Shown here: one piece after another, positions 8,701 through 27,554 of the stretch | Numbering within the stretch: the first letter of the stretch is position 1 | Layout: the number at the start of each line of letters is the position of its first letter | Source: Euprymna scolopes | Taxonomy: Eukaryota | Strand: one strand, 5' to 3' | NCBI GenBank assembly: GCA_053919585.1 | Contig: CM132809.1 | Length of the DNA: 64,000 nucleotides | Notes under the pieces: model-generated | What the model was told of the DNA's origin: nothing | Seen by the model: only the letters and a program-made list of their open reading frames with translations | Database searches by the model: none | Translations under genes and position numbers: made by a program

Positions 8701-9361
8701 AAAAAAGTTTTAAAAAAGAACTAAGAACATTTTTTATATAGAGTTTGTCTAATAAGCCAATAGAAAGCATTAACTTTCTGAGTTCTTTCTTCTCTACTCA
8801 TTACGAACGCGCCGCAATGGAATTGAATATAAAAAGCAAAGCACGACATTAAATGGTTGATTAGTTTGCTTATAAAATCAATTGAAACCAATCACTCTAA
8901 TCTGCTTTTGTTTTGTTTTCATCGATGTGTTACTAAGTAGGTGACAAAAGAAAGATAAACGTTTATTGGGAAAACAGTTGATCTTCCCGTTTTTTTAGGT
9001 CTTTTTTTATGAAATCGATGTTGAATCTGGTTGCAGTATATCGAGATTGTACGGAAAACGTAAACAGATTTCGAATCATATACTTTATCTGGAAATGTTA
9101 TCAATTAATGATAAAGTATATCTCGCAAATCCGGACATGCTAGATCATAATATAAAAGTAGAGAGCTATATAAACATACTAGCTTAAAGTTTTCTGGTCT
9201 TAAAATACCTATAAATATGATATTTTAATTCAAAAAGAAACTGAGACATTTGCATGCGAGTATTATGTATTTTTTGTCTAAAGAGTTACCTTTTTCTATC
9301 TAACAAAATACGCGAGTTGATATCGAAATCAAAGCTAAAACATAGTGAGTAAAGTACGATA

Positions 9362-9722
9362 ACTATTAGGCCAGCTTGGCACCTGTTTAAACAGTTTTTT
9401 AAAAACTACTTATTCTTTATATAAGTAATCTGTAATAATAAGGTTTCACGCATGCGCATTCGTGAAACATTTAGAAAACATATACAAATCAAACAACCCC
9501 CACGTATCCATTTTTAAATTTTTACCCCTTAGCAGCCATTTTTTCGAATAAAAATCGAATATAAAGTTTTCCATATGCCTGAAAATCCGAATAATAAATT
9601 TCAAAATAAGTCAAAAATTCGTTAAGAATATAGGTTGAGAAGTACAGTCACACACATGCACAAACTCACACACAATCTCTCTCTTTCTCTCTCTTTCTCT
9701 ATTACTTTTACAGATATATAGA
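9362..9722 (-). mobile_element. Non-autonomous Helitron-like element (degenerate)
   Basis: The minus strand begins a|TCtatatatctgtaaaag followed by GA/GT microsatellite, and ends in a GC-rich weak hairpin plus atagt. Confidence 0.4.
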
Positions 9723-9886
9723 TGAGAAAAGAGTGAATTGATTAAGTCTGATATTAAAACAGTAAAAATGAAAATGTTTATACAATAACTGTTGCTTTTA
9801 CACCAGCATTGCTTCCAATAAAGCCTTCATCAAGCGATGACTCTGGGTTTTAGGCATGGTTTCGTGGTCGAAGCATTCTTACCACA

Positions 9887-11390
9887 TTTTTTTTAATTAC
9901 ATTATTCACTCCAAACAAGGCACATTGCAACTTTGGTGCAGGGGGCTACTATCAGGGGCAGCAACTACTGGGGTACTATGTTGGGATTTGGGCAGCAAGA
10001 TGTCGGTTCACGTTGCACTTGAACTTCTGCATGTCATTGCAGTGAGGGAAGCAGGCACCTGGAATGGAATTCCAGAGTCTAGCGGTTCTGGGGAAGAAAC
10101 TACTGGAGTAGAAAGATCTTTTACATCTAGGGATCTCTACTGTGTGGGGTGGGATTTAGCTGCCTGTCGGGTTTGTAGAGCGTGTCTACGTCGCGGGGAG
10201 ACAATTGCCTGCAGTTCGTCAGAGCATTCACCATTAAAATACTTGTAGAACAGGCAGAGCGATACAACGTTTCGTCGATGGGACAGAGGCTGAAGCTTAG
10301 ATGCCAGTTCAGGGCCTATCAGATTGACGACTCTCTTTTGAACCTTGTCTAGGAGCGAGAGACTAGTAGCAGATGCACCGGCCTAAATGTGACAATACTC
10401 CATACATGGGCGAATGGTGGCCTTATAGAGGTACAGGATACTTTCAGGTGTCAGCAGTTTTCTAGCACGGTAGAGAGCCTACCTTTTTCGCAGCGGCCCT
10501 GGCAATGTTTTCAATATAATTGTTCCAACTCATGTTTCCTGTGAACGTAAGGCCAAGCAGTTTGAAAGATATACTCTCAGTCAGGGAGTCACTGGCCATT
10601 GCTATTGGTGGCAGAGAAGGTTTCTTGTAATGATTGAAGGAAAATAGTTTAGTCTTGGCAGCATTGAATGTGACCATCGACATATGTCCCCATTCCACTA
10701 CAGATTGGAGGTCATCCTCTAGTGTTTTTGCCATTTCTTAGATATGTGTTCGTTTGTTTTCCTGTCATGCCTGTTATAGAGTGTAGTGTTATCAGCATAT
10801 AAACCCATCTCAGAGGCAGTTTTGTCGGGGAAGTCAGTAATAAATATTAGGTACAACAGAGGTCCAGCACTCCCGCATTTATATCACACTGTTTAGATGT
10901 TCGACCGTCGAGGACAACCTGGATTTTTCTCTTATCTAAGAAGGATTTAATTATGCTAAGAATTCTACCACTGATACCGTATGATTTAATTTTCCTGAGG
11001 AGACCCTTGTGCCATACCCTGTCAAAAGCCTTAGATATATCAAGAGCTAGCGCTCTGCCCTCCCCCGCTTTGTCCAGTGAATGGTATATACGTTCAGAGA
11101 TTACAGTGAGGATGTCAGCTGTGGAACGGGCTTGTCTAAATCCATATTGTTTGTCAGTCAGAAGTTTAGCATCTGTAAGGTGCCGGACTAGAGCATGGTT
11201 AATTATGGTCTCAAATATTTTGGCGAAAAGTGGGAGGAGGCTAATGGGGCGATAATTTGATGGGTCAGTTCTTTCGCCAGAATTCTTGAATATTGGTACC
11301 ACAGAAGCAGTTTTCCAACAGCCCGGAAAGCATGATTCATTAAGGCATTTGTTGTAGAGTTTGGAGAGAACTGGAGCTACTTCGGCTGAG
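9887..11390 (-). mobile_element. CR1/Jockey-group LINE, family A, 5' truncated
   Basis: ORF 10847-11302 has VPIFKNSGERTDPSNYRPISLLP..QYGFR..LDISKAFDRVWHKGL. A YAD motif lies near 10790-10800, followed by FNAAKTK, LLGLTF, IRPCMEYCHI and LQPLSHRRNV. A poly(T) (tail on the minus strand) sits at 9887-9894, and caca flanks both ends. Confidence 0.92.
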
Positions 11391-12187
11391 CACAGATTTT
11401 AATATCTTTCCAACTTACGCTGATGTGCCGAGTCAATTTTTCCCCAAAATGGAACCGATAATTCAGCAAAAAAATTTCAAATTAAATGGTGGTATCCGGA
11501 CACTGATCCGTTAACATGAAATACGAGCCGGTGTTGTAAGTCGATGACACTGTGCCAGTCCGTGCAACTATCAAACAATGGCGATCTTTGTCTATTTCTA
11601 CATAAGGATTTGCGATTATTTCCTTCTTTAACGAAGTGAATGGCTCTACTATCTTTAACTGTATTAGTGGTCACACAACACATTTTCGCAGCTTCCGCAA
11701 CAATCTTCAATACTTCATTATGTCTTCAGGTGTAGCTTCTTAGAGAATGCTCGCATTCAGTGAGAATCTTTTTGAGATTGTCAGTTTTCCCACATGGTTA
11801 GCAGTTTTCCCACATCGATCGAATGTAGTTCACCCGTAGGCATGAAAGTTTATCTGCTGTGGGTAAGACATGTTTGGCTGCTGTTATAAAAAAGCGTTAT
11901 TGTTTAGGCCCCATATATTTGAGGTCGCGCCATGTAATTTCACCGCGCTCTCCCGCGTAGTCCACGCGCCTTGTTTACTTTGAACTTCAGCTGTAGCAAT
12001 ACGCTTGACTTCTTCAAGATCATGGATTTTTCCAAAACCATTTTCCTCTGTTTATAGCGCGTTCTTTTGACCCCCATTGTTTAAGCCCTATACACGCTTT
12101 CCCGCACACAAAGGAACCGACTATTTCTTGCATTTTTAGGACCGATTCTGTATCTTCTTCTGCTGGTTTTGCTTTCTATTTTCGGCC

Positions 12188-15100
12188 AGATATTTACTGT
12201 TGGTCAGACATTCTTTAATACGAGATATTTACTGCTGGTTAGACATTCTTTAATACGAGATATTTACTGCTGGTTGGACATTCTTTAATACGAGATATTT
12301 ACTGCTGGTTAGAAATTCTTTAATACGAGATATTTACTGCTGGTAAGACATTCTTTAATACGAGATATTTACTGCTGGTTCGACATTCTTTAATACGAGA
12401 AATTTACTGCTGGTTGGACATTCTTTAATACGAGATATTTACTGCTGGTTAGACATTCTTTAATACGAGATATTTACTGCTGGTTAGACATTCTTTAATA
12501 CGAGATATTTACTGCTGGTTGGACATTCTTTAATACGAGATATTTACTGCTGGTATGACATTATTTAATACGAGATATTTACTGCTGGTTGGACATTCTT
12601 TAATACGAGATATTTACTGCTGGTTGGGCATTCTTTAATACGAGATATTTACTGCTGGTTAGACATTCTTTAATACGAGATATTTACTGCTGGTTGTAAA
12701 TTCTTTAATACAAGATATTTACTGCTAGTTAGACATTCTTTAATACGAGATATTTACTGCTGGTTAGACATTCTTTAATACGAGATATTTACTGCTGGTT
12801 GTAAATTCTTTAATACGAGATATTTACTGCTGGTTGGACATTCTTTAATACGAGATATTTACTGCTGGTTAGACATTCTTTAATACGAGATATTTACTGC
12901 TGGTTAGACATTCTTTAATACGAGATATTTACTGCTGGTTAGACATTCTTTAATACGAGATATTTACTGCTGGTTAGACTTTCTTTAATACTCGATATTT
13001 ACTGCTGGTTAGACATTCTTTAATACGAGATATTTACTGCTGGTTGGGCATTCTTTAATACGAGATATTTACTGCTGGTTAGACATTCTTTAATACGAGA
13101 TATTTACTGCTGGTTAGACATTCTTTAATACGAGATATTTACTGCTGGTTAGACATTCTTTAATACGAGATATTTACTGCTGGTTGGACATTCTTTAATA
13201 CGAGATATTTACTGCTGGTTAGACATTCTTTAATACGAGATATTTACTGCTGGTTAGACATTCTTTAATACGAGATATTTACTGCTGGTTAGACATTCTT
13301 AAATACGAGATATTTACTGCTGGTTGGACATTCTTTAATACGAGATATTTACTGCTGGTTAGACATTCTTTAATACGAGATATTTACTGCTGGTTGGACA
13401 TTCTTTAATACGAGATATTTACTGCTGGTTAGACATTCTTTAATACGAGATATTTACTGCTGGTTGGACATTCTTTAATACGAGATATTTACTGCTGGTT
13501 AGACATTCTTTAATACGAGATATTTACTGCTGGTTGGACATTCTTTAATACGAGATATTTACTGCTGGTTAGACATTCTTTAATACGAGATATTTACTGC
13601 TGGTTGTAAATTCTTCATTACGAGATATTTACTGCTGGTTACACATTCTTTAATACGAGAAATTTACTGCTGGTTGTAAATTCTTTAATACTAGATATTT
13701 ACTGCTGGTTAGACATTCTTTAATACGAGATATTTACTGCTGGTTAGACATTCTTTAATACGAGATATTTACTGCTGGTATGACATTATTTAATACGAGA
13801 TATTTACTGCTGGTTAGACATTCTTTAATACGAGTTATTTACTGCTGGTTGGACATTCTTTAATACGAGATATTTACTGCTGGTTAGACATTCTTTAATA
13901 CGAGATATTTACTGCTGGTTGTAAATTCTTTAATACAAGATATTTACTGCTAGTAAGACATTCTTTAATACGAGATATTTACTGCTGGTTAGACATGCTT
14001 TAATACGAGATATTTACTGCTGGTTGTAAATTCTTTAATACAAGATATTTACTGCTGGTTAGACATTCTTTAATACGAGATATTTACTGCGGGTTGTAAA
14101 TTCTTAAATACGAGATATTTACTGCTGGTTAGACATTCTTTAATACGAGATATTTACTGCTGGTTGGACATTCTTTAATACGAGATATTTACTGCTGGTT
14201 GGACATTCTTTAATACGAGATATTTACTGCTGGTTAGACATTCTTTAATACGAGATATTTACTGCTGGTTAGACATTCTTTAAGACGAGATATTTACTGC
14301 TGGTTGGACATTCTTTAATACGAGATATTTACTGCTGGTGGGACATTCTGTAATACGAGATATTTACTGCTGGTTGGACATTCTTTAATACGAGATATTT
14401 ACTGCTGGTTAGACATTCTTTAATACGAAATATTTACTGCTGGTTAGACATTCTTTAATACGAGATATTTACTGCTGGTAAGACATTCTTTAATACGAGA
14501 TATTTACTGCTGGTTAGAGATTCTTTAATACGAGATATTTACTGCTGGTTGTAAATTCTTTAATACTAGATATTTACTGCTGCTTGGACATTCTTTTATA
14601 CGAGATATTTACTGCTGGTTAGACATTCTTTAATACGAGATATTTACTGCTGGTAAGACATTCTTTAATACGAGATATTTACTGCTGGTTAGACATTCTT
14701 TAATACGAGATATTTACTGCTGGTTGGACATTCTCTATAATACGAGATATTTACTGCTGGTTAGACATTCTTTAATACGAGATATTTACTGATGGGGTGA
14801 CATTCTTTAATACAAGATATTTACTGCTGGTTAGACATTCTTTAATACGAGATATTTACTGCTGGTTAGACATTCTTTAATACGAGATATTTACTGCTGG
14901 TTGTAAATTCTTTAATACAAGATATTTACTGCTGGTTAGACATTCTTTAATACGAGATATTTACTGCTGGTTAGACATTCTTTAATACGAGGTATTTACT
15001 GCTGGTTAGACATTCTTTAATACGAGATATTTACTGCTGGTTGGACATTCTTTAATACGAGATATTTACTGCTGGTTGTAAATTCTTTAATACGAGATAT

Positions 15101-18100
15101 TTACTGCCGGTTAGACATTCTTTAATACGAGATATTTACTGCTGGTTGGACATTCTTTAATACGAGATATTTACTGCTGGTTGGACATTCTTTAATACGA
15201 GATATTTACTGCTGGTTTGACATTCTTTAATACGAGATATTTACTGCTGGTTGGACATTCTTTAAGACGAGATATTTACTGCTGGTTGGACATTCTTTAA
15301 TACGAGATATTTACTGCTGGTGGGACATTCTTTAATACGAGATATTTACTGCTGGTTGGACATTCTTTAATACGAGATATTTACTGCTGGTTAGACATTC
15401 TTTAATACGAGATATTTACTGCTGGTTAGACATTCTTTAAGACGAGTTATTTACTGCTGGTTGGACATTCTTTAATACGAGATATTTACTGCTGGTGGGA
15501 CATTCTTTAATACGAGATATTTACTGCTGGTTAGACATTCTTTAATACGAGATATTTACTGCTGGTTAGAGATTCTTTAATACGAGATATTTACTGCTGG
15601 TTGTAAATTCTTTAATACGAGATATTTACTGCTGGTTAGACATTCTTTAATACGAGATATTTACTGCTGGTTGGACATTCTTTAATACGAGATATTTACT
15701 GCTGGTTAGAGATTCTTTAATACGAGATATTTACTGCTGGTTGTAAATTCTTTAATACTAGATATTTACTGCTGCTTGGACATTCTTTTATACGAGATAT
15801 TTACTGCTGGTTAGACATTCTTTAATACGAGATATTTACTGCTGGTAAGACATTCTTTAATACGAGATATTTACTGCTGGTTAGACATTCTTTAATACGA
15901 TGAAATTTACTGCTGGTTGGACATTCTTTAATACGAGATATTTACTGCTGGTTAGACATTCTTTAATACGAGATATTTACTGCTGGTTGTAAATTCTTTA
16001 ATACAAGATATTTACTGCTGGTTAGACATTCTTTAATACTCGATATTTACTGCTGGTTAGACATTCTTCAATACGAGATATTTACTGCTGGTTGTAAATT
16101 CTTTAATACAAGATATTTACTGCTGGTTAGACATTCTTTAATACGAGATATTTACTGCTGGTTAGACATTCTTTAATACGAGATATTTACTGCTGGTTAG
16201 ACATTCTTTAATACGAGATATTTACTGCTGGTTAGACATTCTTTAATACGAGATATTTACTGCTGGTAAGACATTCTTTAATACGAGATATTTACTGCTG
16301 GTTAGACATTCTTTAATACGAGATATTTACTGCTGGTTGGACATTCTTTAATACGAGATATTTACTGCTGGTTAGACATTCTTTAATACGAGATATTTAC
16401 TGCTGGTTGTAAATTCTTTAATACAAGATATTTACTGCTGGTTAGACATTCTTTAATACGAGATATTTACTGCTGGTTAGACATTCTTTAATACGAGATA
16501 TTTACTGCTGGTTGTAAATTCTTTAATACGAGATATTTACTGCTGGTTAGACATTCTTTAATACGAGATATTTACTGCTGGTTGTAAATTCTTTAATACG
16601 AGATATTTACTGCTGGTTAGACATTCTTTAATACGAGATATTTACTGCTGGTTAGACATTCTTTAATACGAGATATTTACTGCTGGTTGGACATTCTTTA
16701 ATACGAGATATTTACTGCTGGTATGACATTATTTAATACGAGATATTTACTGCTGGTTGGACATTCTTTAATACGAGATATTTACTGCTGGTTGTAAATT
16801 CTTTAATACGAGATATTTACTGCCGGTTAGACATTCTTTAATACGAGATATTTACTGCTGGTTTGACATTCTTTAATACGAGATATTTACTGCTGGTTGG
16901 ACATTCTTTAATACGAGATATTTACTGCTGGTTAGACATTCTTTTATACGAGATATTTACTGCTGGTTAGACATTCTTTAAGACGAGATATTTACTGCTG
17001 GTTGGACATTCTTTAATACGAGATATTTACTGCTGGTGGGACATTCTTTAATACGAGATATTTACTGCTGGTTGGACATTCTTTAATACGAGATATTTAC
17101 TGCTGGTTAGACATTCTTTAATACGAGATATTTACTGCTGGTTAGACATTCTTTAAGACGAGTTATTTACTGCTGGTTGGACATTCTTTAATACGAGATA
17201 TTTACTGCTGGTTGGACAGTCTTTAATACGAGATATTTACTGCTGGTTGGACATTCTTTAATACGAGATATTTACTGCTGGTTATACATTCTTTAATACG
17301 AAATATTTACTGCTGGTTAGACATTCTTTAATACGAGATATTTACTGCTGGTTGTAAATTCTTTAATACGAGATATTTACTGCTGGTTAGACATTCTTTA
17401 ATACGAGATATTTACTGCTGGTTGGACATTCTTTAATACTAGATATTTACTGCTGGTTGGACATTCTTTTATACGAGATGTTTACTGCTGGTTAGACATT
17501 CTTTAATACGAGATATTTACTGCTGGTAAGACATTCTTTAATACGAGATATTTACTGCTGGTTGGACATTCTTTAATACGAGATATTTACTGCTGGTTGG
17601 ACATTCTTTAATACGAGATATTTACTGCTGGTTAGACATTCTTTAATACGAGATATTTACTGCTGGTTAGACATTCATTAATACGAGATATTTACTGCTG
17701 GTTGGACATTCTTTAATACGAGATGCTTACTGCTGGTGGGACATTTTTTAATACGAGATATTTACTGCTTGTTGGACATTCTTTAATACGAGAAATTTAC
17801 TGCTGGTTGTAAATTCTTTAATACGAGATATTTACTGCTGGTTGGACATTCTTTAATACTAGATATTTACTGCTGGTTGGACATTCTTTAATACGAGATA
17901 TTTACTGCTTGTTGGACATTCATTAATACGAGATATTTACTGCTGGTTAGACATTCTTTAATACGAGATATTTACTGCTGGTTGGACATTCATTAATACG
18001 AGATATTTACTGCTGGTTGGACATTCTTTAATACTAGATATTTACTGCTGGTTAGACATGCTTTAATACGAGATATTTACTGCTGGTTGGACATTCTTTA

Positions 18101-21100
18101 ATACGAGATATTTACTGCTGGTTAGACATTCATAATTACGAGATATTTACTGCTGGTTGGACATTCTTTAATACGAGATATTTACTGCTGGGGTGACATT
18201 CTTTAATACGAGATATTTACTGCTGGTTAGACATTCATTAATACGAGATATTTACTGCTGGTTGGACATTCTTTAATACGAGATATTTACTGCTGGTTGG
18301 ACATTCTTTAATACGAGATATTTACTGCTGGTTGGACATTCTTTAATACGAGATATTTACTGCTGGTTGGACATTCATTAATACGAGATATTTACTGCTG
18401 GTTGGACATTCTTTAATAGGAGATATTTACTGCTGGTTGGACATTCTTTAATACGAGATATTTACTGCTGGTTAGAGATTCTTTAATACGAGATATTTAC
18501 TGCTGGTTGTAAATTCTTTAATACTAGATATTTACTGCTGGTTGGACATTCTTTAATACGAGATATTTACTGCTGGTTGGACATTCTTTAATACGAGATA
18601 TTTACTGCTGGTTGGACATTCATTAATACGAGATATTTACTGCTGGTTGGACATTCTTTAATACGAGATATTTACTGCTGGTTGGACATTCATTAATACG
18701 AGATATTTACTGCTGGTTGGACATTCTTTAATACGAGATATTTACTGCTGGTTGGACATTCTTTAATACGAGATATTTACTGCTGGTTGGACATTCATTA
18801 ATACGAGATATTTACTGCTGGTTGGACATTCTTTAATACGAGATATTTACTGCTGGTTGGACATTCATTAATACGAGATATTTACTGCTGGTTAGACATT
18901 CTTTAATACGAGATATTTACTGCTGGTTAGACATTCTTTAATACGAGATATTTACTGCTGGTTAGACATTCTTTAATACGAGATATTTACTGCTGGTTGG
19001 ACATTCTTTAATACTAGATATTTACTGCTGGTTAGACATTCTTTTATACGAGATATTTACTGCTGGTTAGACATTCTTTTATACGAGATATTTACTGCTG
19101 GTTAGACATTCTTTAATACGAGATATTTACTGCTGGTTGGACATTCATTAATACGAGATATTTACTGCTGGTTGGACATTCTTTAATACGAGATACTTAC
19201 TGCTGGTTGGACATTCTTTAATACGACATATTTACTGCTTGTTTGACATTCTTTAATACGAGAAATTTACTGCCGGTTGTAAATTCTTTAATACGAGATA
19301 TTTACTGCTGGTTGGACATTCTTTAATACGAGATATTTACTGCCGGTGAGACATTCATAAATACGAGATATTTACTGCTGGTTGGACATTCATTAATACG
19401 AGATATTTACTGCTGGTTGGACATTCTTTAATAGGAGATATTTACTGCTGGTTAGACATTCTTTAATACGAGATATTTACTGCTGGTTAGAGATTCTTTA
19501 ATACGAGATATTTACTGCTGGTTAGACATTCTTTAATACTAGATATTTACTGCTGGTTGGACATTCTTTAATACGAGATATTTACTGCTGGTTAGACATT
19601 CTTTAATACGAGATATTTACTGCTGGTTAGACATTCTTAAATACGAGATATTTACTGCTGGTTAGACATTCTTTAATACGAGATATTTACTGCTGGTTAG
19701 ACATTCTTTAATACGAGATATTTACTGCTGGTTGGACATTCTTTAATACGAGATATTTACTGCTGATTCGACATTCTTTAATACGAGATATTTACTGCTG
19801 GTTAGACATGCTTTAATACGAGATATTTACTGCTGGTTGGACATTCTTTAATACGAGATATTTACTTCTGGTTAGAGATTCTTTAATACGAGATATTTAC
19901 TGCTGGTTGGACATTCTTTAATACGAGATATTTACTGCTGGTTGGACATTCTTTCATACGAGATATTTACTGCTGGTTAGACATTCTTTAATACGAGATA
20001 TTTACTGCTGGTAAGACATTCTTTAATACGAGATATGTACTGGTGGTTGGACATTCTTTAATACGAGATATTTACTGCTCGTTGGACATTCTTTAATACG
20101 AGATATTTACTGCTGGTTAGACATTCTTTAATACGAGATATTTACTGCTGGTAAGACATTCATACATACGAGATATTTACTGCTGGTTGGACATTCTTTA
20201 ATACGAGATACTTACTGCTGGTTGGACATTCTTTAATACGAGATATTTACTGCTGGTTGGACATTCTTTAATACGAGAAATTTACTGCTGGTTGTAAATT
20301 CTTTAATACGAGATATTTACTGCTGGTTAGACATTCTTTAATACGAGATATTTACTGCAGGTTGGACATTCATTAATACGAGATATTTACTGCTGGTTGG
20401 ACATTCTTTAATACGAGATATTTACTGCTGGTTAGACATTCTTTAATACGAGATATTTACTGCTGGTTGGACATTAATTAATACGAGAAATTTACTGCTG
20501 GTTGGACATTCTTTAATACGAGATATTTACTGCTGGTTAGACATTCTTTAATACGAGATATTTACTGCTGGTTGGACATTCTTTAATACGAGATATTTAC
20601 TGCTGGGGTGACATTCTTTAATACGAGATATTTACTGCTGGTTAGACATTCTTTAATACGAGATATTTACTGCTGGTTGGACATTCTTTAATACGAGATA
20701 TTTACTGCTGGTTGGACATTCTTTTATACGAGATATTTACTGCTGATTCGACATTCTTTAATACGAGATATTTACTGCTGGTTAGACATTCTTTAATACG
20801 AGATATTTACTGCTGGTTGGACATTCTTTAATACGAGATATTTACTGCTGGTTGTAAATTCTTTAATACGAGATATTTACTGCTGGTTAGACATTCTTTA
20901 ATACGAGATATTTACTGCTGGTTGGACATTCTTTAATACGAGATATTTACTGCTGGTTGGACATTCTTTAATACGAGATATTTACTGCTGGTTAGACATT
21001 CTTAAATACGAGATATTTACTGCTGGTTAGACATTCTTTAATACGAGATATTTACTGCTGGTTGGACATTCTTTAATACGAGATATTTACTGCTGGTTAG

Positions 21101-23249
21101 ACATTCTTTAATACGAGATATTTACTGCTGGTTGGACATTCTGTAATACGAGATATTTACTGCTGGTTAGACATTCTTTAATACGAGATATTTACTGCTG
21201 GTTGGACATTCTTTAATACGATATATTTACTGCTGGTTGGACATTCTTTAATACGAGATATTTACTGCGTGTTAGACATTCTTTAATACGAGATATTTAC
21301 TGCTGGTTGCACATTCTTTAATACGAGGTATTTACTGCTGGTTGGACATTCTTTAATACGAGATATTTACTGCTGGTTGGACATTCTTTAATACGAGATA
21401 TTTACTGCTGGTTGGACATTCTTTAATACGAGATATTTACTGCTGGTTGTAAATTCTTTAATACGAGATATTTACTGCTGGTTAGACATTCTTTAATACG
21501 AGATATTTACTGCTGGTTGGACATTCTTTAATACGAGATATTTACTGCTGGTTGTAACTTCTTTAATACGAGATATTTACTGCTGGTTAGACATTCTTTA
21601 ATACGAGATATTTACTGCTCGTTGGACATTCTTTAATACGAGATATTTACTGCTGGTTAGACATTCTTTAATACGAGATATTTACTGCTGGTAAGACATT
21701 CATACATACGAGATATTTACTGCTGGTTGGACATTCTTTAATACGAGATACTTACTGCTGGTTGGACATTCTTTAATACGAGATATTTACTGCTGGTTGG
21801 ACATTCTTTAATACGAGAAATTTACTGCTGGTTGTAAATTCTTTAATACGAGATATTTACTGCTGGTTAGACATTCTTTAATACGAGATATTTACTGCAG
21901 GTTGGACATTCATTAATACGAGATATTTACTGCTGGTTGGACATTCTTTAATACGAGATATTTACTGCTGGTTAGACATTCTTTAATACGAGATATTTAC
22001 TGCTGGTTGGACATTCATTAATACGAGAAATTTACTGCTGGTTGGACATTCTTTAATACGAGATATTTACTGCTGGTTAGACATTCTTTAATACGAGATA
22101 TTTACTGCTGGTTGGACATTCTTTAATACGAGATATTTACTGCTGGGGTGACATTCTTTAATACGAGATATTTACTGCTGGTTAGACATTCTTTAATACG
22201 AGATATTTACTGCTGGTTGGACATTCTTTAATACGAGATATTTACTGCTGGTTGGACATTCTTTTATACGAGATATTTACTGCTGATTCGACATTCTTTA
22301 ATACGAGATATTTACTGCTGGTTAGACATTCTTTAATACGAGATATTTACTGCTGGTTGGACATTCTTTAATACGAGATATTTACTGCTGGTTGTAAATT
22401 CTTTAATACGAGATATTTACTGCTGGTTAGACATTCTTTAATACGAGATATTTACTGCTGGTTGGACATTCTTTAATACGAGATATTTACTGCTGGTTGG
22501 ACATTCTTTAATACGAGATATTTACTGCTGGTTAGACATTCTTTAATACGAGATATTTACTGCTGGTTAGACATTCCTTAATACGAGATATTTACTGCTG
22601 GTTGGACATTCTTTAATACGAGATATTTACTGCTGGTTAGACATTCTTTAATACGAGATATTTACTGCTGGTTGGACATTCTGTAATACGAGATATTTAC
22701 TGCTGGTTAGACATTCTTTAATACGAGATATTTACTGCTGGTTGGACATTCTTTAATACGATATATTTACTGCTGGTTGGACATTCTTTAATACGAGATA
22801 TTTACTGCGTGTTTGACATTCTTTAATACGAGATATTTACTGCTGGTTGCACATTCTTTAATACGAGGTATTTACTGCTGGTTGGACATTCTTTAATACG
22901 AGATATTTACTGCTGGTTGGACATTCTTTAATACGAGATATTTACTGCTGGTTGGACATTCTTTAATACGAGATATTTACTGCTGGTTGTAAATTCTTTA
23001 ATACGAGATATTTACTGCTGGTTAGACATTCTTTAATACGAGATATTTACTGCTGGTTGGACATTCTTTAATACGAGATATTTACTGCTGGTTGTAACTT
23101 CTTTAATACGAGATATTTACTGCTGGTTAGACATTCTTTAATACGAGATATTTACTGCTGGTTGGACATTCTTTAATACGAGATATTTACTGTTGGTTGT
23201 AAATTCTTTAATACCAGATCTTAACTGCTAGTTGGACATTCTTTAATAC
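12188..23249. repeat. 35-bp tandem satellite, about 315 copies; consensus gagatatttactgctggtt(a/g)gacattctttaatac
   Basis: Directly visible head-to-tail array with no spacers. I saw only two register shifts, +2 nt near 14735 and +1 nt near 15901. Confidence 0.99.
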
Positions 23250-23491
23250 TGGGTCGGGAGAGTCACGCAGTATCTGGAAAAGTCGCGTATTACTCAATTT
23301 CTATTCCTCTACAAGTGATGGCGTTGAGAGTTTAAACTTCGTTTATGAACTATATAGTGCCACGTTTGTCAGAGAATTAGACCCCCCCCCAACCATTTCT
23401 TCATAAACTTGTTGATCAGGCAAACTGTTATAAGTGATATTCCATAAATCTGAATTGGCCATGAAAACTTTGGAATTAATCGAAAGTAATT

Positions 23492-23770
23492 ACGGTCCTG
23501 GATATGACCTTAAACTATATCCAATGGTGAGCCCCCAGCTTTCGGGCTTTGGGGAGTGTAGAGCTATCCTTCAATTGCCATTGCTCGAAGGTCCACTCTG
23601 ACCCGGAGTGGTAGTACCTGTTAGGGTCCCAACTATGGGTTAAATAGAAACCGACTTGAAAACAACAAATATATTCTATTAAAAAATCCTTCTTCAAAAT
23701 CTTTGGATTCGGCGTTAAATAACCTGAAAAGGGTTGATATGCCGTAAAACAAAAACAGCCAATAAACAAA
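23492..23770 (+). mobile_element. 5'-truncated SINE-like insertion inside the HERO-like ORF
   Basis: It interrupts the ORF between KMWCNYF and LIPKFSW, is flanked by an imperfect 13-bp duplication (atcgaaagtaatt 23479-91; attcaaagtaatt 23771-83) and ends in an A/C-rich tail. The core gtcctggatatgaccttaaact...ggtccactctgacccggagtggtagtacctg resembles widespread invertebrate SINE bodies from memory; family not verified. Confidence 0.65.
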
Positions 23771-24357
23771 ATTCAAAGTAATTGCACCACATCTTGTCTT
23801 TGTTAGGAGGCACACTTATCAATTGAGCGTAATCCATCTTTTAGCATTCGTAGTAGGTCCTGCAATCAGTGTTGATCAGTCAGAAGTCGAGAATGACAGT
23901 GACCAAGGGTTTTGAAGCACTTTTCGCAGGTTATGGGGCCTGTTTCCGTCCACAAAGAATGTTGTTTCTCTGCCGATTCCTTTAAAAATTGATGAACTTC
24001 GACATTTAAATGACTTTATTTTTATCGCGCCCCATTTAAACAGTCTAAATAATAATATAATAATATAAATAATTTGATTTATTTACAAAAGCTTAGGTTT
24101 TTATATGCTTATGTAATAAATTGTACATAATTTTCTGCTAAAATAATTACACGGGCATTAAGAATTTTTTAAAGCCTCTGCGTAAGCTGTAATAATATGA
24201 GGCGTATGCAGTTTAATTCAGTTAAAGACCAATGTGGTAAAGAGGAAACTGGAGCTTTTCATGGAGCTTGTTTTGGATGAAGATGAAGAACTAGAAGTAC
24301 TAAATACACAATATACCGAGTGAAACGAGAAAAATACTTTTAATCAGACTTGACATG

Positions 24358-24425
<68 letters not shown>

Positions 24426-24501
24426 TTGTACTCTTTTGTAGAAAAAGAAATCCCATACAGTGCTCTATTATTAGGGAAAAACCTTTCTCGAAATAAGAGC
24501 A

Positions 24502-24756
24502 ATATATTTTTTTGTATAATATATACAGGAATTTACATCGGTAGTCGGTACCGACGGTTTCAAGCCCAGTATGTGAGGACTGCTCTTAATGTCCGTCTCA
24601 GGCTCTCTTCAGCCGACACTCATCTGATGATGAGATGAGAGTCGGCTGAAGAGAGCCTGAGGCAGACATTAAGAGCAGTCCTCACATACTGGGCTTGAAA
24701 CCGTCGGTACCGACTACCGATGTAAATTCCTGTATATATTATACCAAAAAAATATA
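24502..24756. repeat. Near-perfect long inverted repeat (about 124-bp arms, 7-nt spacer), Penelope pLTR-like
   Basis: 24502-24625 is the reverse complement of 24633-24756 with only a few mismatches; the spacer is gatgatg. Confidence 0.97.
24640..24715 (+). ncRNA. Type I hammerhead ribozyme (mirror copy on the minus strand at about 24543-24617)
   Basis: Stem I AGUCGG (24640-45)/CCGACU (24710-15); core CUGAAGA (24646-52); stem II GAGCCU/GGGCUU; GAA; stem III ACC-guc-GGU; predicted cleavage after GUA at 24709. Confidence 0.8.
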
Positions 24757-25067
24757 TATATAGGTACAGAGAGTGAGAAAAAGAGAGAAAGGAAGAACGA
24801 TGTAGTAGTTTTGGTTTGTAAATGTGTTTACTATTATTAGTATATTGTCTGTGTTCCACTTTGCACACCAGCGCATACCTCCATGGATCCACTTTAGGAA
24901 ATGCGAGTATGCACTGGGAAAATTTCTGATCCAATGGAGCAAATGACGTAAGGGAATCAGATGGCTATCGAATAAAACAACACCTTCAACTTCCTGGTTA
25001 AAATGATTTGATAATGCCGGCAAAATAGGAAGGATATAGAAATCGAATTGTTGACTTAAGATAAAAA

Positions 25068-25117
<50 letters not shown>

Positions 25118-25219
25118 ATATATATATATATATATAGATATATATATATAAGAATGTTTAGTACCTACTCACACTAGTGCTTTATCTTTTCGGAGCAATC
25201 AGTGCAGGAAGATATGAGA

Positions 25220-25296
25220 TGCCGCAGGTCGTGGGATTCGAAGCTCATTAGGAATCCAAGTCTGCATCCATTACCAAGGAACAAACCACAGGGCCC
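25220..25296 (-). mobile_element. Degenerate tRNA-derived SINE head
   Basis: The minus strand has a B-box-like cttcgaatccc and a tRNA-like layout, but no intact cloverleaf. Confidence 0.35.
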
Positions 25297-26254
25297 CTGT
25301 TAACCAAAACTATATTTAATTGAAATTAAACATTTATAAAGTTATACTTGAATTGTCTACAGTGATTAAGCGACTAGGCTGCCACAATCTCGCACACTGG
25401 CTAAATGACTGACTTTCAGTAGAAAGTGTTCAATTTGTAAGAAACTTGTTCCCGTAGTTTGTATGAAATCATATATATTTTAATATATATGTCATTTATG
25501 TTTTTGTCAAAATCCTGTTAGCCGATTATTCTTCAAAGCAAATAAATTCCTTAGTTTATTAAGTAAATGAGTAAAATGAACCCACAACTATATATTTTTT
25601 TTTTGTTTTATATTTCGACGATTGCTTCAACTTAGGTCTGTGCCGTCTTAGACGCGTTTCGAAACACATAACTAAAAACATTTTTTGGTGTATATGCGTG
25701 TACTTTCGTCACTATTAACTAGTAATAATAAGTGAAAAAAGGTAGTATAGATTTAAGAACGATAATGGAACGTGCTCTTATGAACCCCTTGCACTAAATA
25801 TACATATTCTTTACAAACCCAGTTAGCAACAAAATCACACCCCTTCACTGTTGACGTCCAATAATGACAGAAAGCTTTTTTTTCTCTGATAGTTTCTTTC
25901 CTCGAAGACCTAGACTTTGAAATTCCCTTCTTGTTATCTGCTTCTCTGACTGTACTGATATGCAGCATTGAACATAAGGCTAATACTCGGCACATAAATA
26001 TACAAATATTATTATTATCTTTTAATGATGATTTCCGTTTTCAGCTTCGAACGAGTGTACTATCCTTCCGTGCTCAGTTCAAAATAATAATTACATATTT
26101 GTTGCATAGTCTTCAAAGCATTCTCCCAGGCATTATTTCATCTTTTCGATGTCAGTGTGGTATATGTTATTTTTTTTAACATATATTACGAAAATATGCG
26201 ACCCTTTCTGTTTTTGGCAGGTATATTATAAATATACCTAACTATGCAAATAAA

Positions 26255-26420
26255 GACCCGTGGCTCAGTGGTTAGAGTACTGGGAAAATCAATTGTGAAA
26301 TTGATATTCTACTGAAGGTTGAAGGTTCAATCCTCAGTGTGGGCGACCGAAATAAACATTTGCGAATTACTTAGGATCTCTATCCAGTCATGGCTTACGC
26401 TACCCCCGTGAAGTAAATAA
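26255..26420 (+). mobile_element. tRNA-derived SINE
   Basis: A box tggctcagtgg (26261) and B box ggttcaatcc (26324), followed by a non-tRNA body. Confidence 0.55.
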
Positions 26421-26722
26421 AGGGGTCCACTCGAAATTTCGTCCAAATTCTCGAGTTCGACAGAAACATTCCCGAGTTCGACAAGATACATCTGAAGAAG
26501 GTAGGAGGTTATATCCGCCGAAACGTTGTAAAAATCACACTCAACAGTAGTCCGATGAATAATAATACATATAACCAATCCTTATCTAAAAAATTCAGAA
26601 ACGTAATATTTTTTGTCGTTGTTTTTAGTTAAATAATAATGTTTGTTAAATTATTATCTATCAACATATTGAAAAAATTATGCTTTTCTTTTTTTCTAGG
26701 TAAGTTCCCGTCTATATATATA

Positions 26723-26782
<60 letters not shown>

Positions 26783-27554
26783 TACAGAAATTACTACCGA
26801 GATTCATGGTAATTATGATTTCTTTCAATTTTTAAGTCTCTTGCAATGGTTATTGTATTCTTTTTTTCGAACATAAAACCTGTATTATATTTCTATTCAA
26901 ATATTGTTTTGTTTTTCTTTAAAATACTTTGTTTCTAGATAAGTTCTTACTTACAGAATAACCCACACACATACACACACATTTATTTATTAGTATATAT
27001 ATATATATATACACACACACACATATATATATATATATTTTAGACACATGTGAACTTTCTTACATCATAGAAAAATACCGTCTATAAAAGCAATACAGTT
27101 AATCAGTTTATAAATTACATAACAAAAATACACTTAATTCAATTTCAGTTAAATATCCACATTTGAATTATTACAGCCAAAATAACTCGAAACGAATATT
27201 AACTCCATCATATATATTTTAAATATATTAACAGCTATATGACATTTAAAAGATTACACTTTTTTCACAACGTCATAGGATTTTATTTATGCCTAATTAT
27301 TTTTCGTTCTGAGTTCGACTAATGTCATCCTTTTAACAAATATAATTTCAAATATTTCAACAACTTTTTTCGTTCTGAAGTAGTATACTGTTCTAATTTT
27401 AACAACATATATTTTCAAATGTTTAGTAGAATTATATTTTCCTCAATTAATTTATCCAGAAAAAAGTCTTACAATAAAGACGAAAGATCTGTTGTGGCAT
27501 ATAGCTTGGTTTGTTTCTGATTCATCTCTTTATTAGGTCGGAATACATAATTAT

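What the first reader, a model, noticed from the sequence alone, without database searches (positions are those of the whole stretch)
12188..23249. An 11-kb satellite born in place from 35 bp of a retrotransposon's own ORF
Seen: collapsing the array to one monomer joins the flanks into a continuous minus-strand sequence ...gactctcccgaccca-gtattaaagaatgtccaaccagcagtaaatatc-tggccgaaaatag..., which reads LRDSPDP-VLKNVQPAV(I)-SGRK*KAK. Established (from recall): RDS.DP.V.....V.TGRKW.A is a conserved post-RT stretch of HERO/R2-like RLE elements. So the monomer is host-element coding sequence amplified about 315-fold at its original position, with both junctions preserved, and not an inserted foreign satellite. 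TE-derived satellites are known, but an intact birth site inside a coding region is uncommon.
Basis: partly seen in the sequence, partly recalled or inferred. Interest (0 to 1): 0.85.

Follow-up and report, generated by a model that had tools for sequence, protein, structure and literature searches.

The report
Minisatellite grown inside a dead retrotransposon
A 35-base piece of the former protein-coding sequence of a dead jumping gene has been copied about 316 times in place, giving an 11-kb repeat found only at this one locus; it is a clean example of a process already known to be common.

Summary
Window 12188-23249 is a 35-bp x 316 tandem array. It lies inside a dead, 5'-truncated non-LTR retrotransposon on the minus strand. 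Collapsing the array to one unit restores colinearity with other genomic copies of that element, 72-77% identical by BLAST. Of 14 copies spanning the site, 11 carry exactly one monomer equivalent, 3 carry partial deletions, and none carries more than one. The unit encodes VLKNVQPAV.., the variable stretch between the conserved anchors RDSxD and GRKW. These anchors lie between the RT and the CCHC knuckle plus C-terminal nuclease of an R2-superfamily element. "HERO" is plausible but could not be tested. A junction-specific 31-mer occurs 309 times in the 5.9-Gb assembly, and all 309 are in this array. It is therefore a single-locus giant minisatellite, not a dispersed satellite. A short-read contig from a public run bridges one junction, and read depth fits a multi-kb array. 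A 44-unit block duplicated at 99.7% identity points to growth by unequal exchange. TE-derived tandem repeats are well documented (PMC3389668, PMC7004042). This is a neat new member of a known kind, of moderate to low interest. The scan had not noted it on other DNA.

The parts
12188..23249 (-). 35-bp x 316 tandem array. The minus-strand unit is GTATTAAAGAATGTCCAACCAGCAGTAAATATCTC. There are two major variants (position 16 C or T) and a third TTTAC variant.
   Evidence: TRF; unit statistics; no ORF of 50 aa or more on either strand.
20050..23160 (-). Two tandem copies of a 44-unit (1,540-bp) block inside the array. They differ at 4 positions in about 1,570 nt (99.7%), against about 94% identity between units in general.
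   Evidence: Self-comparison at lag 1540; the unit-variant string repeats.
23250..23493 (-). Host element sequence just upstream of the array on the minus strand. It encodes ...PNSLTNVALYSS*TKFKLSTPSLVEE*KLSNTRLFQILRDSPDP, the post-RT linker ending in the RDSxD anchor.
   Evidence: Translation; homology to other copies.
23493..23774 (.). Nested insertion of an abundant repeat of about 270-280 bp, SINE-like. It has over 3,600 first-look candidates genome-wide at 92-95% identity and is absent at this point in other copies of the host element.
23770..24052 (-). 5'-most surviving part of the host element, the end of the RT/thumb region (..KIKSFKCRSSSIFKG..GRETTFFVDGN..). DNA homology stops near 24052 and protein-level resemblance near 24110. 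The copy is 5'-truncated and has no RT core.
11391..12187 (-). Host element downstream of the array. It holds the GRK(W)KA anchor, the linker, the CCHC knuckle region (..FFITAAKHVLPTADKL.. C*PCGKTDNLKKILTECEHSLRSYT*RHNEVLKIV..) and the start of the nuclease domain, with several stops.
   Evidence: Pfam zf-RVT on the equivalent ORF of copy L004.
9885..11391 (-). Nested, 5'-truncated, unrelated LINE with a CR1/jockey-like RT (..[23 protein letters not shown]..). It interrupts the host element's nuclease region.
   Evidence: Pfam RVT_1 E=4e-18 on 10847-11302; absent from other host-family copies.
9766..9885 (-). Last detectable 3' piece of the host element.
   Evidence: 80-89% matches to the 3' parts of six other copies.

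Best explanation
An old copy of an R2-superfamily (RLE-type, HERO-like) non-LTR retrotransposon inserted here 5'-truncated and decayed. Later, a 35-nt segment of its former ORF was duplicated in place. That segment encodes the variable stretch between the conserved RDSxD and GRKW anchors of the linker downstream of the RT. The duplication then grew to about 316 units by repeated local duplication. Growth first went unit by unit (replication slippage or unequal sister-chromatid exchange), then in multi-unit blocks, the latest being a 44-unit, 1.54-kb block. The array has no coding capacity and no predicted structure, and it occurs at no other locus. It is a neutral, single-locus giant minisatellite, not a dispersed satellite.

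Shown: homology, single-copy state elsewhere, uniqueness of the locus, the block duplication, and a junction in independent reads. Inferred: the order of events, the slippage and unequal-exchange mechanism, and neutrality.
For: The array is defined.

In-place origin:
- Collapsed flanks plus one unit align colinearly to other copies, as shown base by base.
- 11 of 14 spanning copies have one equivalent and none has more.
- In copy L004 the ORF reads straight through: LFQMLHDPVLKNAQPAVISGRKWKAMQAVEDAV.
- The motif is conserved across 13 relatives.

Element type:
- RVT_1, a zf-RVT-like CCHC and no APE domain in an intact 1102-aa relative.
- Best PDB hits are R2 proteins, at E=1e-17.
- Relatives occur in bivalves, amphioxus and fish.

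Single locus:
- The junction 31-mer (up to 3 mismatches) occurs 309 times genome-wide and 309 times in the window.
- The ancestral-type duplication junction occurs 0 times genome-wide.

Timing and edges:
- Substitutions that set the unit apart from other copies (T4, A6, T14, the extra A) are present in essentially all units, including the terminal ones. The host copy had therefore already diverged before amplification.
- The edge units are the most divergent. The first unit keeps the ancestral terminal G where most units have C.

Growth: a 44-unit block is duplicated at 99.7% identity.

Independent data:
- A 182-nt contig of run X1 bridges the flank/array junction (12059-12240).
- Summed array depth over flank depth corresponds to roughly 7.5-9.4 kb in X1 and X2.
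- Array words occur in 15 runs from 7 studies of the same mollusc.
Against: - No long read spanning the 11 kb could be examined, so the exact length, and even the 44-unit duplication, could be partly an assembly product.
- The tool warns that depth from contigs is not a copy number.
- Two runs guessed to be RNA (X3, X4) cover the flank at low depth but show no array contigs at the junction. The cause could be low coverage, absence from RNA, or an allele without the array.
- The slippage and unequal-exchange mechanism is inferred. Rolling-circle amplification with homologous re-integration would leave the same junctions.
- The 2-nt GT microhomology at the unit borders is within chance.
Confidence: 0.88

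Rival explanations
1. Assembly artefact. The true locus holds only a few units, and the long-read assembler inflated the array or duplicated the 1.54-kb block.
For: No spanning read was inspected. The 99.7%-identical 44-unit block is the sort of thing assemblers can duplicate. X3 and X4 show no array contigs at the junction.
Against: There are 77 distinct unit variants in a non-periodic order, which is not what a collapsed or expanded repeat looks like. In short-read runs X1 and X2, array contigs are about 100-fold deeper than the flank, equivalent to about 7.5-9.4 kb. Array words occur in 7 studies.
Confidence: 0.05
2. A pre-existing satellite from elsewhere invaded this locus, or the element captured a satellite unit, so the resemblance to the ORF is secondary.
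For: None found. It was considered because TE and satellite similarity can in principle run in either direction.
Against: The unit is homologous to a single-copy, protein-coding stretch. That stretch is present in dispersed copies on many chromosomes and in relatives from other phyla. The unit-to-unit junction occurs nowhere else in 5.9 Gb.
Confidence: 0.02
3. In-place amplification as in the best explanation, but the array has acquired a role, for example as a small-RNA source, a chromatin boundary or a protein-binding platform, and is maintained by selection.
For: One oligo-dT RNA-seq run holds 11% of the sampled array words. The array is large and fairly homogeneous.
Against: It is a single locus with no ORF, no Rfam match and no DNA or RNA structure (z-scores +1.8 and +1.9). 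It lies in a TE-rich stretch. The RNA share is small and may be genomic DNA carry-over.
Confidence: 0.05

Closest known systems
TE-derived minisatellites and satellites formed by local tandem duplication inside a transposable element (Ahmed & Liang 2012, PMC3389668; review PMC6947457)
   Same: The repeat unit is a piece of a TE. The array sits inside that TE copy and expanded by local duplication of units after the TE inserted.
   Different: This array is unusually long (316 units, 11 kb) for a single TE-internal locus. Its source is a former coding segment of an RLE-type LINE in a mollusc, with both junctions and many single-copy relatives available for comparison.
Retrotransposon-derived satellites of Lathyrus sativus, from Ogre LTR elements (Vondrak et al. 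2020, PMC7004042)
   Same: Short TE-internal sequence occasionally expands into long arrays at particular loci while the parent TE stays dispersed.
   Different: In Lathyrus the precursor is already a short tandem array in a non-coding part of an LTR element, present in many copies, and expansions cluster at centromeres. Here the precursor is single-copy ORF sequence of a non-LTR element, only one copy expanded, and the site is interstitial (31.6 Mb of a 115-Mb chromosome).
R2-superfamily (RLE-encoding) non-LTR retrotransposons: the CRE, R2, R4, NeSL and HERO clades (Kojima & Jurka 2015, PMC4640811)
   Same: The host element's family has a single ORF with an N-terminal zinc finger, RT, a CCHC knuckle and a C-terminal PD-(D/E)XK-like nuclease. 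R2 proteins are its best solved relatives. Its copies are dispersed, as described for HERO.
   Different: The copy in the window is a decayed 3' fragment without an RT core.

Membership tests
TE-derived tandem repeat expanded in place | The monomer is homologous to an internal segment of a transposable element | tested here: met
   The unit aligns to the single segment GTAGTGAAGAATGCCCAACCAGCAGTAATATCTG in other copies.
TE-derived tandem repeat expanded in place | The array is flanked on both sides, in register, by the TE sequence that adjoins that segment | tested here: met
   The collapsed locus aligns in one HSP across both junctions; base-level view.
TE-derived tandem repeat expanded in place | Other copies of the TE carry the segment once | tested here: met
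   11 of 14 copies have one, 3 have partial deletions, 0 have more than one. No ancestral-type duplication junction occurs genome-wide.
TE-derived tandem repeat expanded in place | The array is physically real at about this length | tested here: inconclusive
   One junction is bridged by a short-read contig, and depth corresponds to about 7.5-9.4 kb. No spanning long read was available.
Satellite DNA in the strict sense (abundant, multi-locus arrays) | The same repeat forms arrays at several loci or makes up a notable share of the genome | tested here: not met
   All 309 genome-wide matches of the unit junction lie in this one array. 11 kb of 5.9 Gb is 0.0002%.
RLE-encoding (R2-superfamily) non-LTR retrotransposon (host element) | Reverse transcriptase of the non-LTR type, closest to R2 | tested here: met
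   RVT_1 E=2e-21 in an intact relative. The best PDB hits are R2 proteins at 1e-17. A weak RVT_1 match (2e-6, below cut-off) occurs in old-family copy L006.
RLE-encoding (R2-superfamily) non-LTR retrotransposon (host element) | CCHC zinc knuckle between the RT and the endonuclease | tested here: met
   Invariant C882, C885, H894 and C899 in the 13-protein alignment. zf-RVT matches fall just below the Pfam cut-off.
RLE-encoding (R2-superfamily) non-LTR retrotransposon (host element) | C-terminal PD-(D/E)XK restriction-like endonuclease and no APE domain | tested here: inconclusive
   Invariant R991-P992-D993, E1008, E1014, E1022 and K1024 fit the signature, and Pfam finds no APE domain. No profile or structure test of the nuclease fold was run.
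HERO clade | Placement within HERO in an RT phylogeny with Repbase references (HERO-1_SP, HERO-1_BF, HEROTn and others) | not testable with these tools
   No reference sequences were held. The taxon range of the relatives (amphioxus, fish, molluscs) and their dispersed, non-site-specific copies are consistent with HERO but are not a test.

The most novel reading that the evidence does not exclude
The array is a very young, still-growing repeat caught at its birthplace. Under this reading it is restricted to this species, varies in length or presence between individuals, and is expanding by kilobase-sized block duplications. With its single-copy precursors preserved in dozens of paralogous TE copies, it would offer a natural system for measuring how a unique 35-bp sequence becomes a long tandem array.
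Probability: 0.4. Interest if true: 0.45.

Novelty: new member of a known kind. Interest (0 to 1): 0.3.

Why it matters
The first steps of tandem-repeat birth are rarely visible, because the donor context is usually lost. Ahmed & Liang found that known mechanisms explain the start of only about 6% of TE-derived repeats (PMC3389668). Here the precursor, both junctions, the pre-amplification mutations, the edge units and a recent 44-unit block duplication can all be read. The locus is therefore a good teaching and test case for slippage and unequal-exchange models, and a likely hypervariable marker in this mollusc. It reveals no new kind of element or mechanism.

Tried and rejected
- Foreign or pre-existing satellite: rejected, because the unit junction is unique to this locus and the unit is single-copy ORF sequence in its relatives.
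- Independent expansion of the same segment in other copies: none found. The ancestral-type junction pattern has 0 hits, and 0 of 14 copies have more than one unit.
- Hairpin-driven slippage: rejected. Three-unit stretches fold no better than shuffles on either strand (z +1.94 and +1.82).
- Regular higher-order repeat: none. Unit identity is flat across lags 1-15. Only irregular block duplications were seen.
- Coding or RNA-family function of the array: no ORF of 50 aa or more and no Rfam match at gathering score in 9000-27000.
- The right flank searched as a whole was swamped by a nested SINE-like repeat. This was resolved by aligning the trimmed flank.
- My in-phase background identity figure was distorted by the two indel-bearing units and is not used.
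- Pfam on short ORF pieces of old copies gave mostly nothing. Classification therefore rests on an intact related family, 39% identical over the linker.
Full report
**Observation**

Tandem Repeats Finder reports a single array at exactly 12188-23249, with period 35, 316.0 copies, 93% matches and no indels. It is the only high-scoring tandem repeat in the window, and no N run lies inside it.

Cutting the array into units on the minus strand gives 313 units of 35 nt plus one of 36 and one of 37. There are 77 distinct unit sequences, differing from the consensus GTATTAAAGAATGTCCAACCAGCAGTAAATATCTC at 1.27 positions on average. Two variants dominate, with position 16 as T in 81 identical units and as C in 76. 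A third variant (TTTAC) accounts for 21 units.

**Flanks**

The genome is 5.9 Gb, with at least 46 chromosome-sized contigs (C1-C46). Runs that hold the sequence are labelled with a single coded organism name or as 'mollusc metagenome'.

The downstream flank has many dispersed relatives at 70-77% identity. I joined 244 bp of upstream flank, one unit and 738 bp of downstream flank and compared this with those loci. The alignment runs straight across both junctions in single HSPs, for example L007 at query 1-1015, L004 at 5-914 and L006 at 5-983.

The base-level alignment shows ...ACCCA|GTAGTGAAGAATGCCCAACCAGCAGTAATATCTG|GTCGAAAATGG... in the relatives. Among 14 copies that span the site, 11 have one equivalent of the unit, 3 have partial deletions and none has two or more.

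In copy L004 an open frame reads through the segment: LFQMLHDPVLKNAQPAVISGRKWKAMQAVEDAV.

**Anatomy of the host copy (minus strand)**

- about 24052-23770: end of the RT/thumb region. The copy is 5'-truncated and has no RT core.
- 23774-23493: a nested SINE-like repeat of about 280 bp that is very abundant in the genome at 92-95% identity.
- 23493-23250: element.
- 23249-12188: the array.
- 12187-11391: element, comprising the linker, the CCHC region and the start of the nuclease domain, with stops.
- 11391-9885: a nested, unrelated CR1/jockey-like LINE fragment (RVT_1, 4e-18).
- 9885-9766: the last piece of the element.

**What the element is**

All copies of the old family are broken. A related family, 39% identical over the linker, has many intact 1102/1103-aa ORFs.

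One of these (L045:2577-5882:-) has:
- an N-terminal C2H2-like finger;
- RVT_1 at 2e-21;
- a zf-RVT-like CCHC knuckle;
- a C-terminal ...KRPDILLW...ELTVPWEEN...ERKKDRY... module;
- no APE domain.

Its best solved relatives are R2 retrotransposon proteins, at E=1e-17 over the RT. Full-length homologues occur in bivalves, amphioxus and teleosts.

In a 13-protein alignment the majority line reads ...SSLVEEFKVAKxRxxMxxRDSxDxxVxxAGxxxRTGRKWxAxEAVxxAESxLRH..., with invariant S738, D740 and K755 and near-invariant G753 and W756. The CCHC residues and the R-P-D...E...E...K residues are also invariant.

The unit encodes the variable stretch between its two anchors.

Kojima & Jurka (PMC4640811) divide RLE elements into the CRE, R2, R4, NeSL and HERO clades, HERO being the mostly non-site-specific one. 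The dispersed copies and the taxon range fit HERO. Clade membership is defined by RT phylogeny with reference sequences that I did not have, so it remains untested.

**Is it a satellite?**

A 31-mer spanning the unit-to-unit junction, allowing up to 3 mismatches, occurs 309 times in the whole assembly and 309 times in the window. The junction expected from a duplication in an unmodified relative occurs nowhere.

The repeat is therefore confined to this one locus, at 31.6 Mb of a 115-Mb chromosome. It is better called a giant minisatellite than a satellite.

**Is it real?**

Only short-read contig sets could be laid on the locus. In run X1 a 182-nt contig covers 12059-12240 and so bridges the flank/array junction. 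It differs from the assembly at three positions of the first unit, which makes that unit canonical. This suggests a different haplotype or individual, and variation at the array edge.

In X1 and X2 the summed depth over the three array bins, divided by flank depth, corresponds to roughly 7.5 and 9.4 kb of repeat. The tool warns that such depth is not a copy number, so I take this only as rough consistency with 11 kb.

Words from the array interior are held by 15 runs from 7 studies. No spanning long read could be examined.

**How it grew**

The substitutions that distinguish the unit from other copies (T4, A6, T14, the extra A) are shared by essentially all units, including the terminal ones. 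The host copy had therefore already diverged when amplification began. Over the roughly 1 kb compared, it is now about 79% identical to its relatives, which are about 85% identical to each other.

The first unit next to the upstream flank is the most divergent. It keeps the ancestral terminal G where nearly all other units have C. This is the usual pattern of poorly homogenised array edges.

There is no regular higher-order period. However, a 44-unit block (1,540 bp) is present twice in tandem with 4 differences in about 1,570 nt, against about 94% identity between units generally.

The unit forms no DNA hairpin, the array has no ORF and there is no Rfam match.

The simplest account is an initial slippage duplication followed by unequal exchange in register, still recent at the block level. 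Rolling-circle amplification with homologous re-integration cannot be excluded. The mechanism is inferred, not shown.

**Comparison with what is known**

Ahmed & Liang (PMC3389668) found that at least 23% of human minisatellites and satellites derive from TEs and expand by local duplication of units. Vondrak et al. (PMC7004042) showed that nine of eleven major Lathyrus satellites derive from short arrays inside LTR retrotransposons that occasionally expand. A review lists many further cases (PMC6947457).

The present case differs in four details: a single-copy former coding segment of an RLE LINE, one locus only, a mollusc host, and very clean junctions. It does not differ in kind.

**Verdict**

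It is a new member of a known kind, with interest about 0.3.

Noticed in passing
L045:2574-9679 (G000:C5:41136573-41143678); also C11:7.198-7.207 Mb, C21:21.50-21.51 Mb, C22, C23, C28, C29, C39: Intact 1102/1103-aa relatives of the host element lie head to tail in tandem with a 3,797-bp period: a 3.3-kb ORF plus a 488-bp spacer containing A/G-rich and poly-T tracts. Several such pairs or triplets occur on different chromosomes. They may be self-targeting or microsatellite-targeting insertions, or tandem duplications.
   Followed up: partly
window 23493-23774: A SINE-like repeat of about 280 bp is nested in the host element. It has more than 3,600 first-look candidates genome-wide at 92-95% identity, so it is much younger than the host family.
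   Followed up: partly
window 9885-11391: A 5'-truncated CR1/jockey-like LINE (RVT_1, 4e-18) is nested in the same orientation in the nuclease region of the host element. About 245 bp of host sequence present in other copies is missing at that point.
   Followed up: partly
L010:1-1330 (minus strand of G000:C41:71559676-71563377): Another copy of the host family carries a different long tandem expansion, just after its ORF end, reading KKTETKYKKKKQKQNTRKK... in all three frames. This family has therefore spawned arrays from other segments too.
   Followed up: no
window 24502-24756: Another first-stage note (s1-263320) calls this a palindrome with a hammerhead ribozyme on each strand. My Rfam scan of 9000-27000 at gathering thresholds found no family there. 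That does not exclude a minimal hammerhead.
   Followed up: partly
window 12200-12206: In public run X1 the first array unit next to the flank reads as a canonical unit (T>C, C>T, A>G against the assembly) at full flank depth. This suggests allelic variation at the array edge.
   Followed up: no
window 24358-24424, 25070-25150 and many ORF-list hits: (AT)n/(TA)n microsatellites are frequent around the locus. Six N runs of 131-169 bases lie elsewhere in the window and were left as they are.
   Followed up: no
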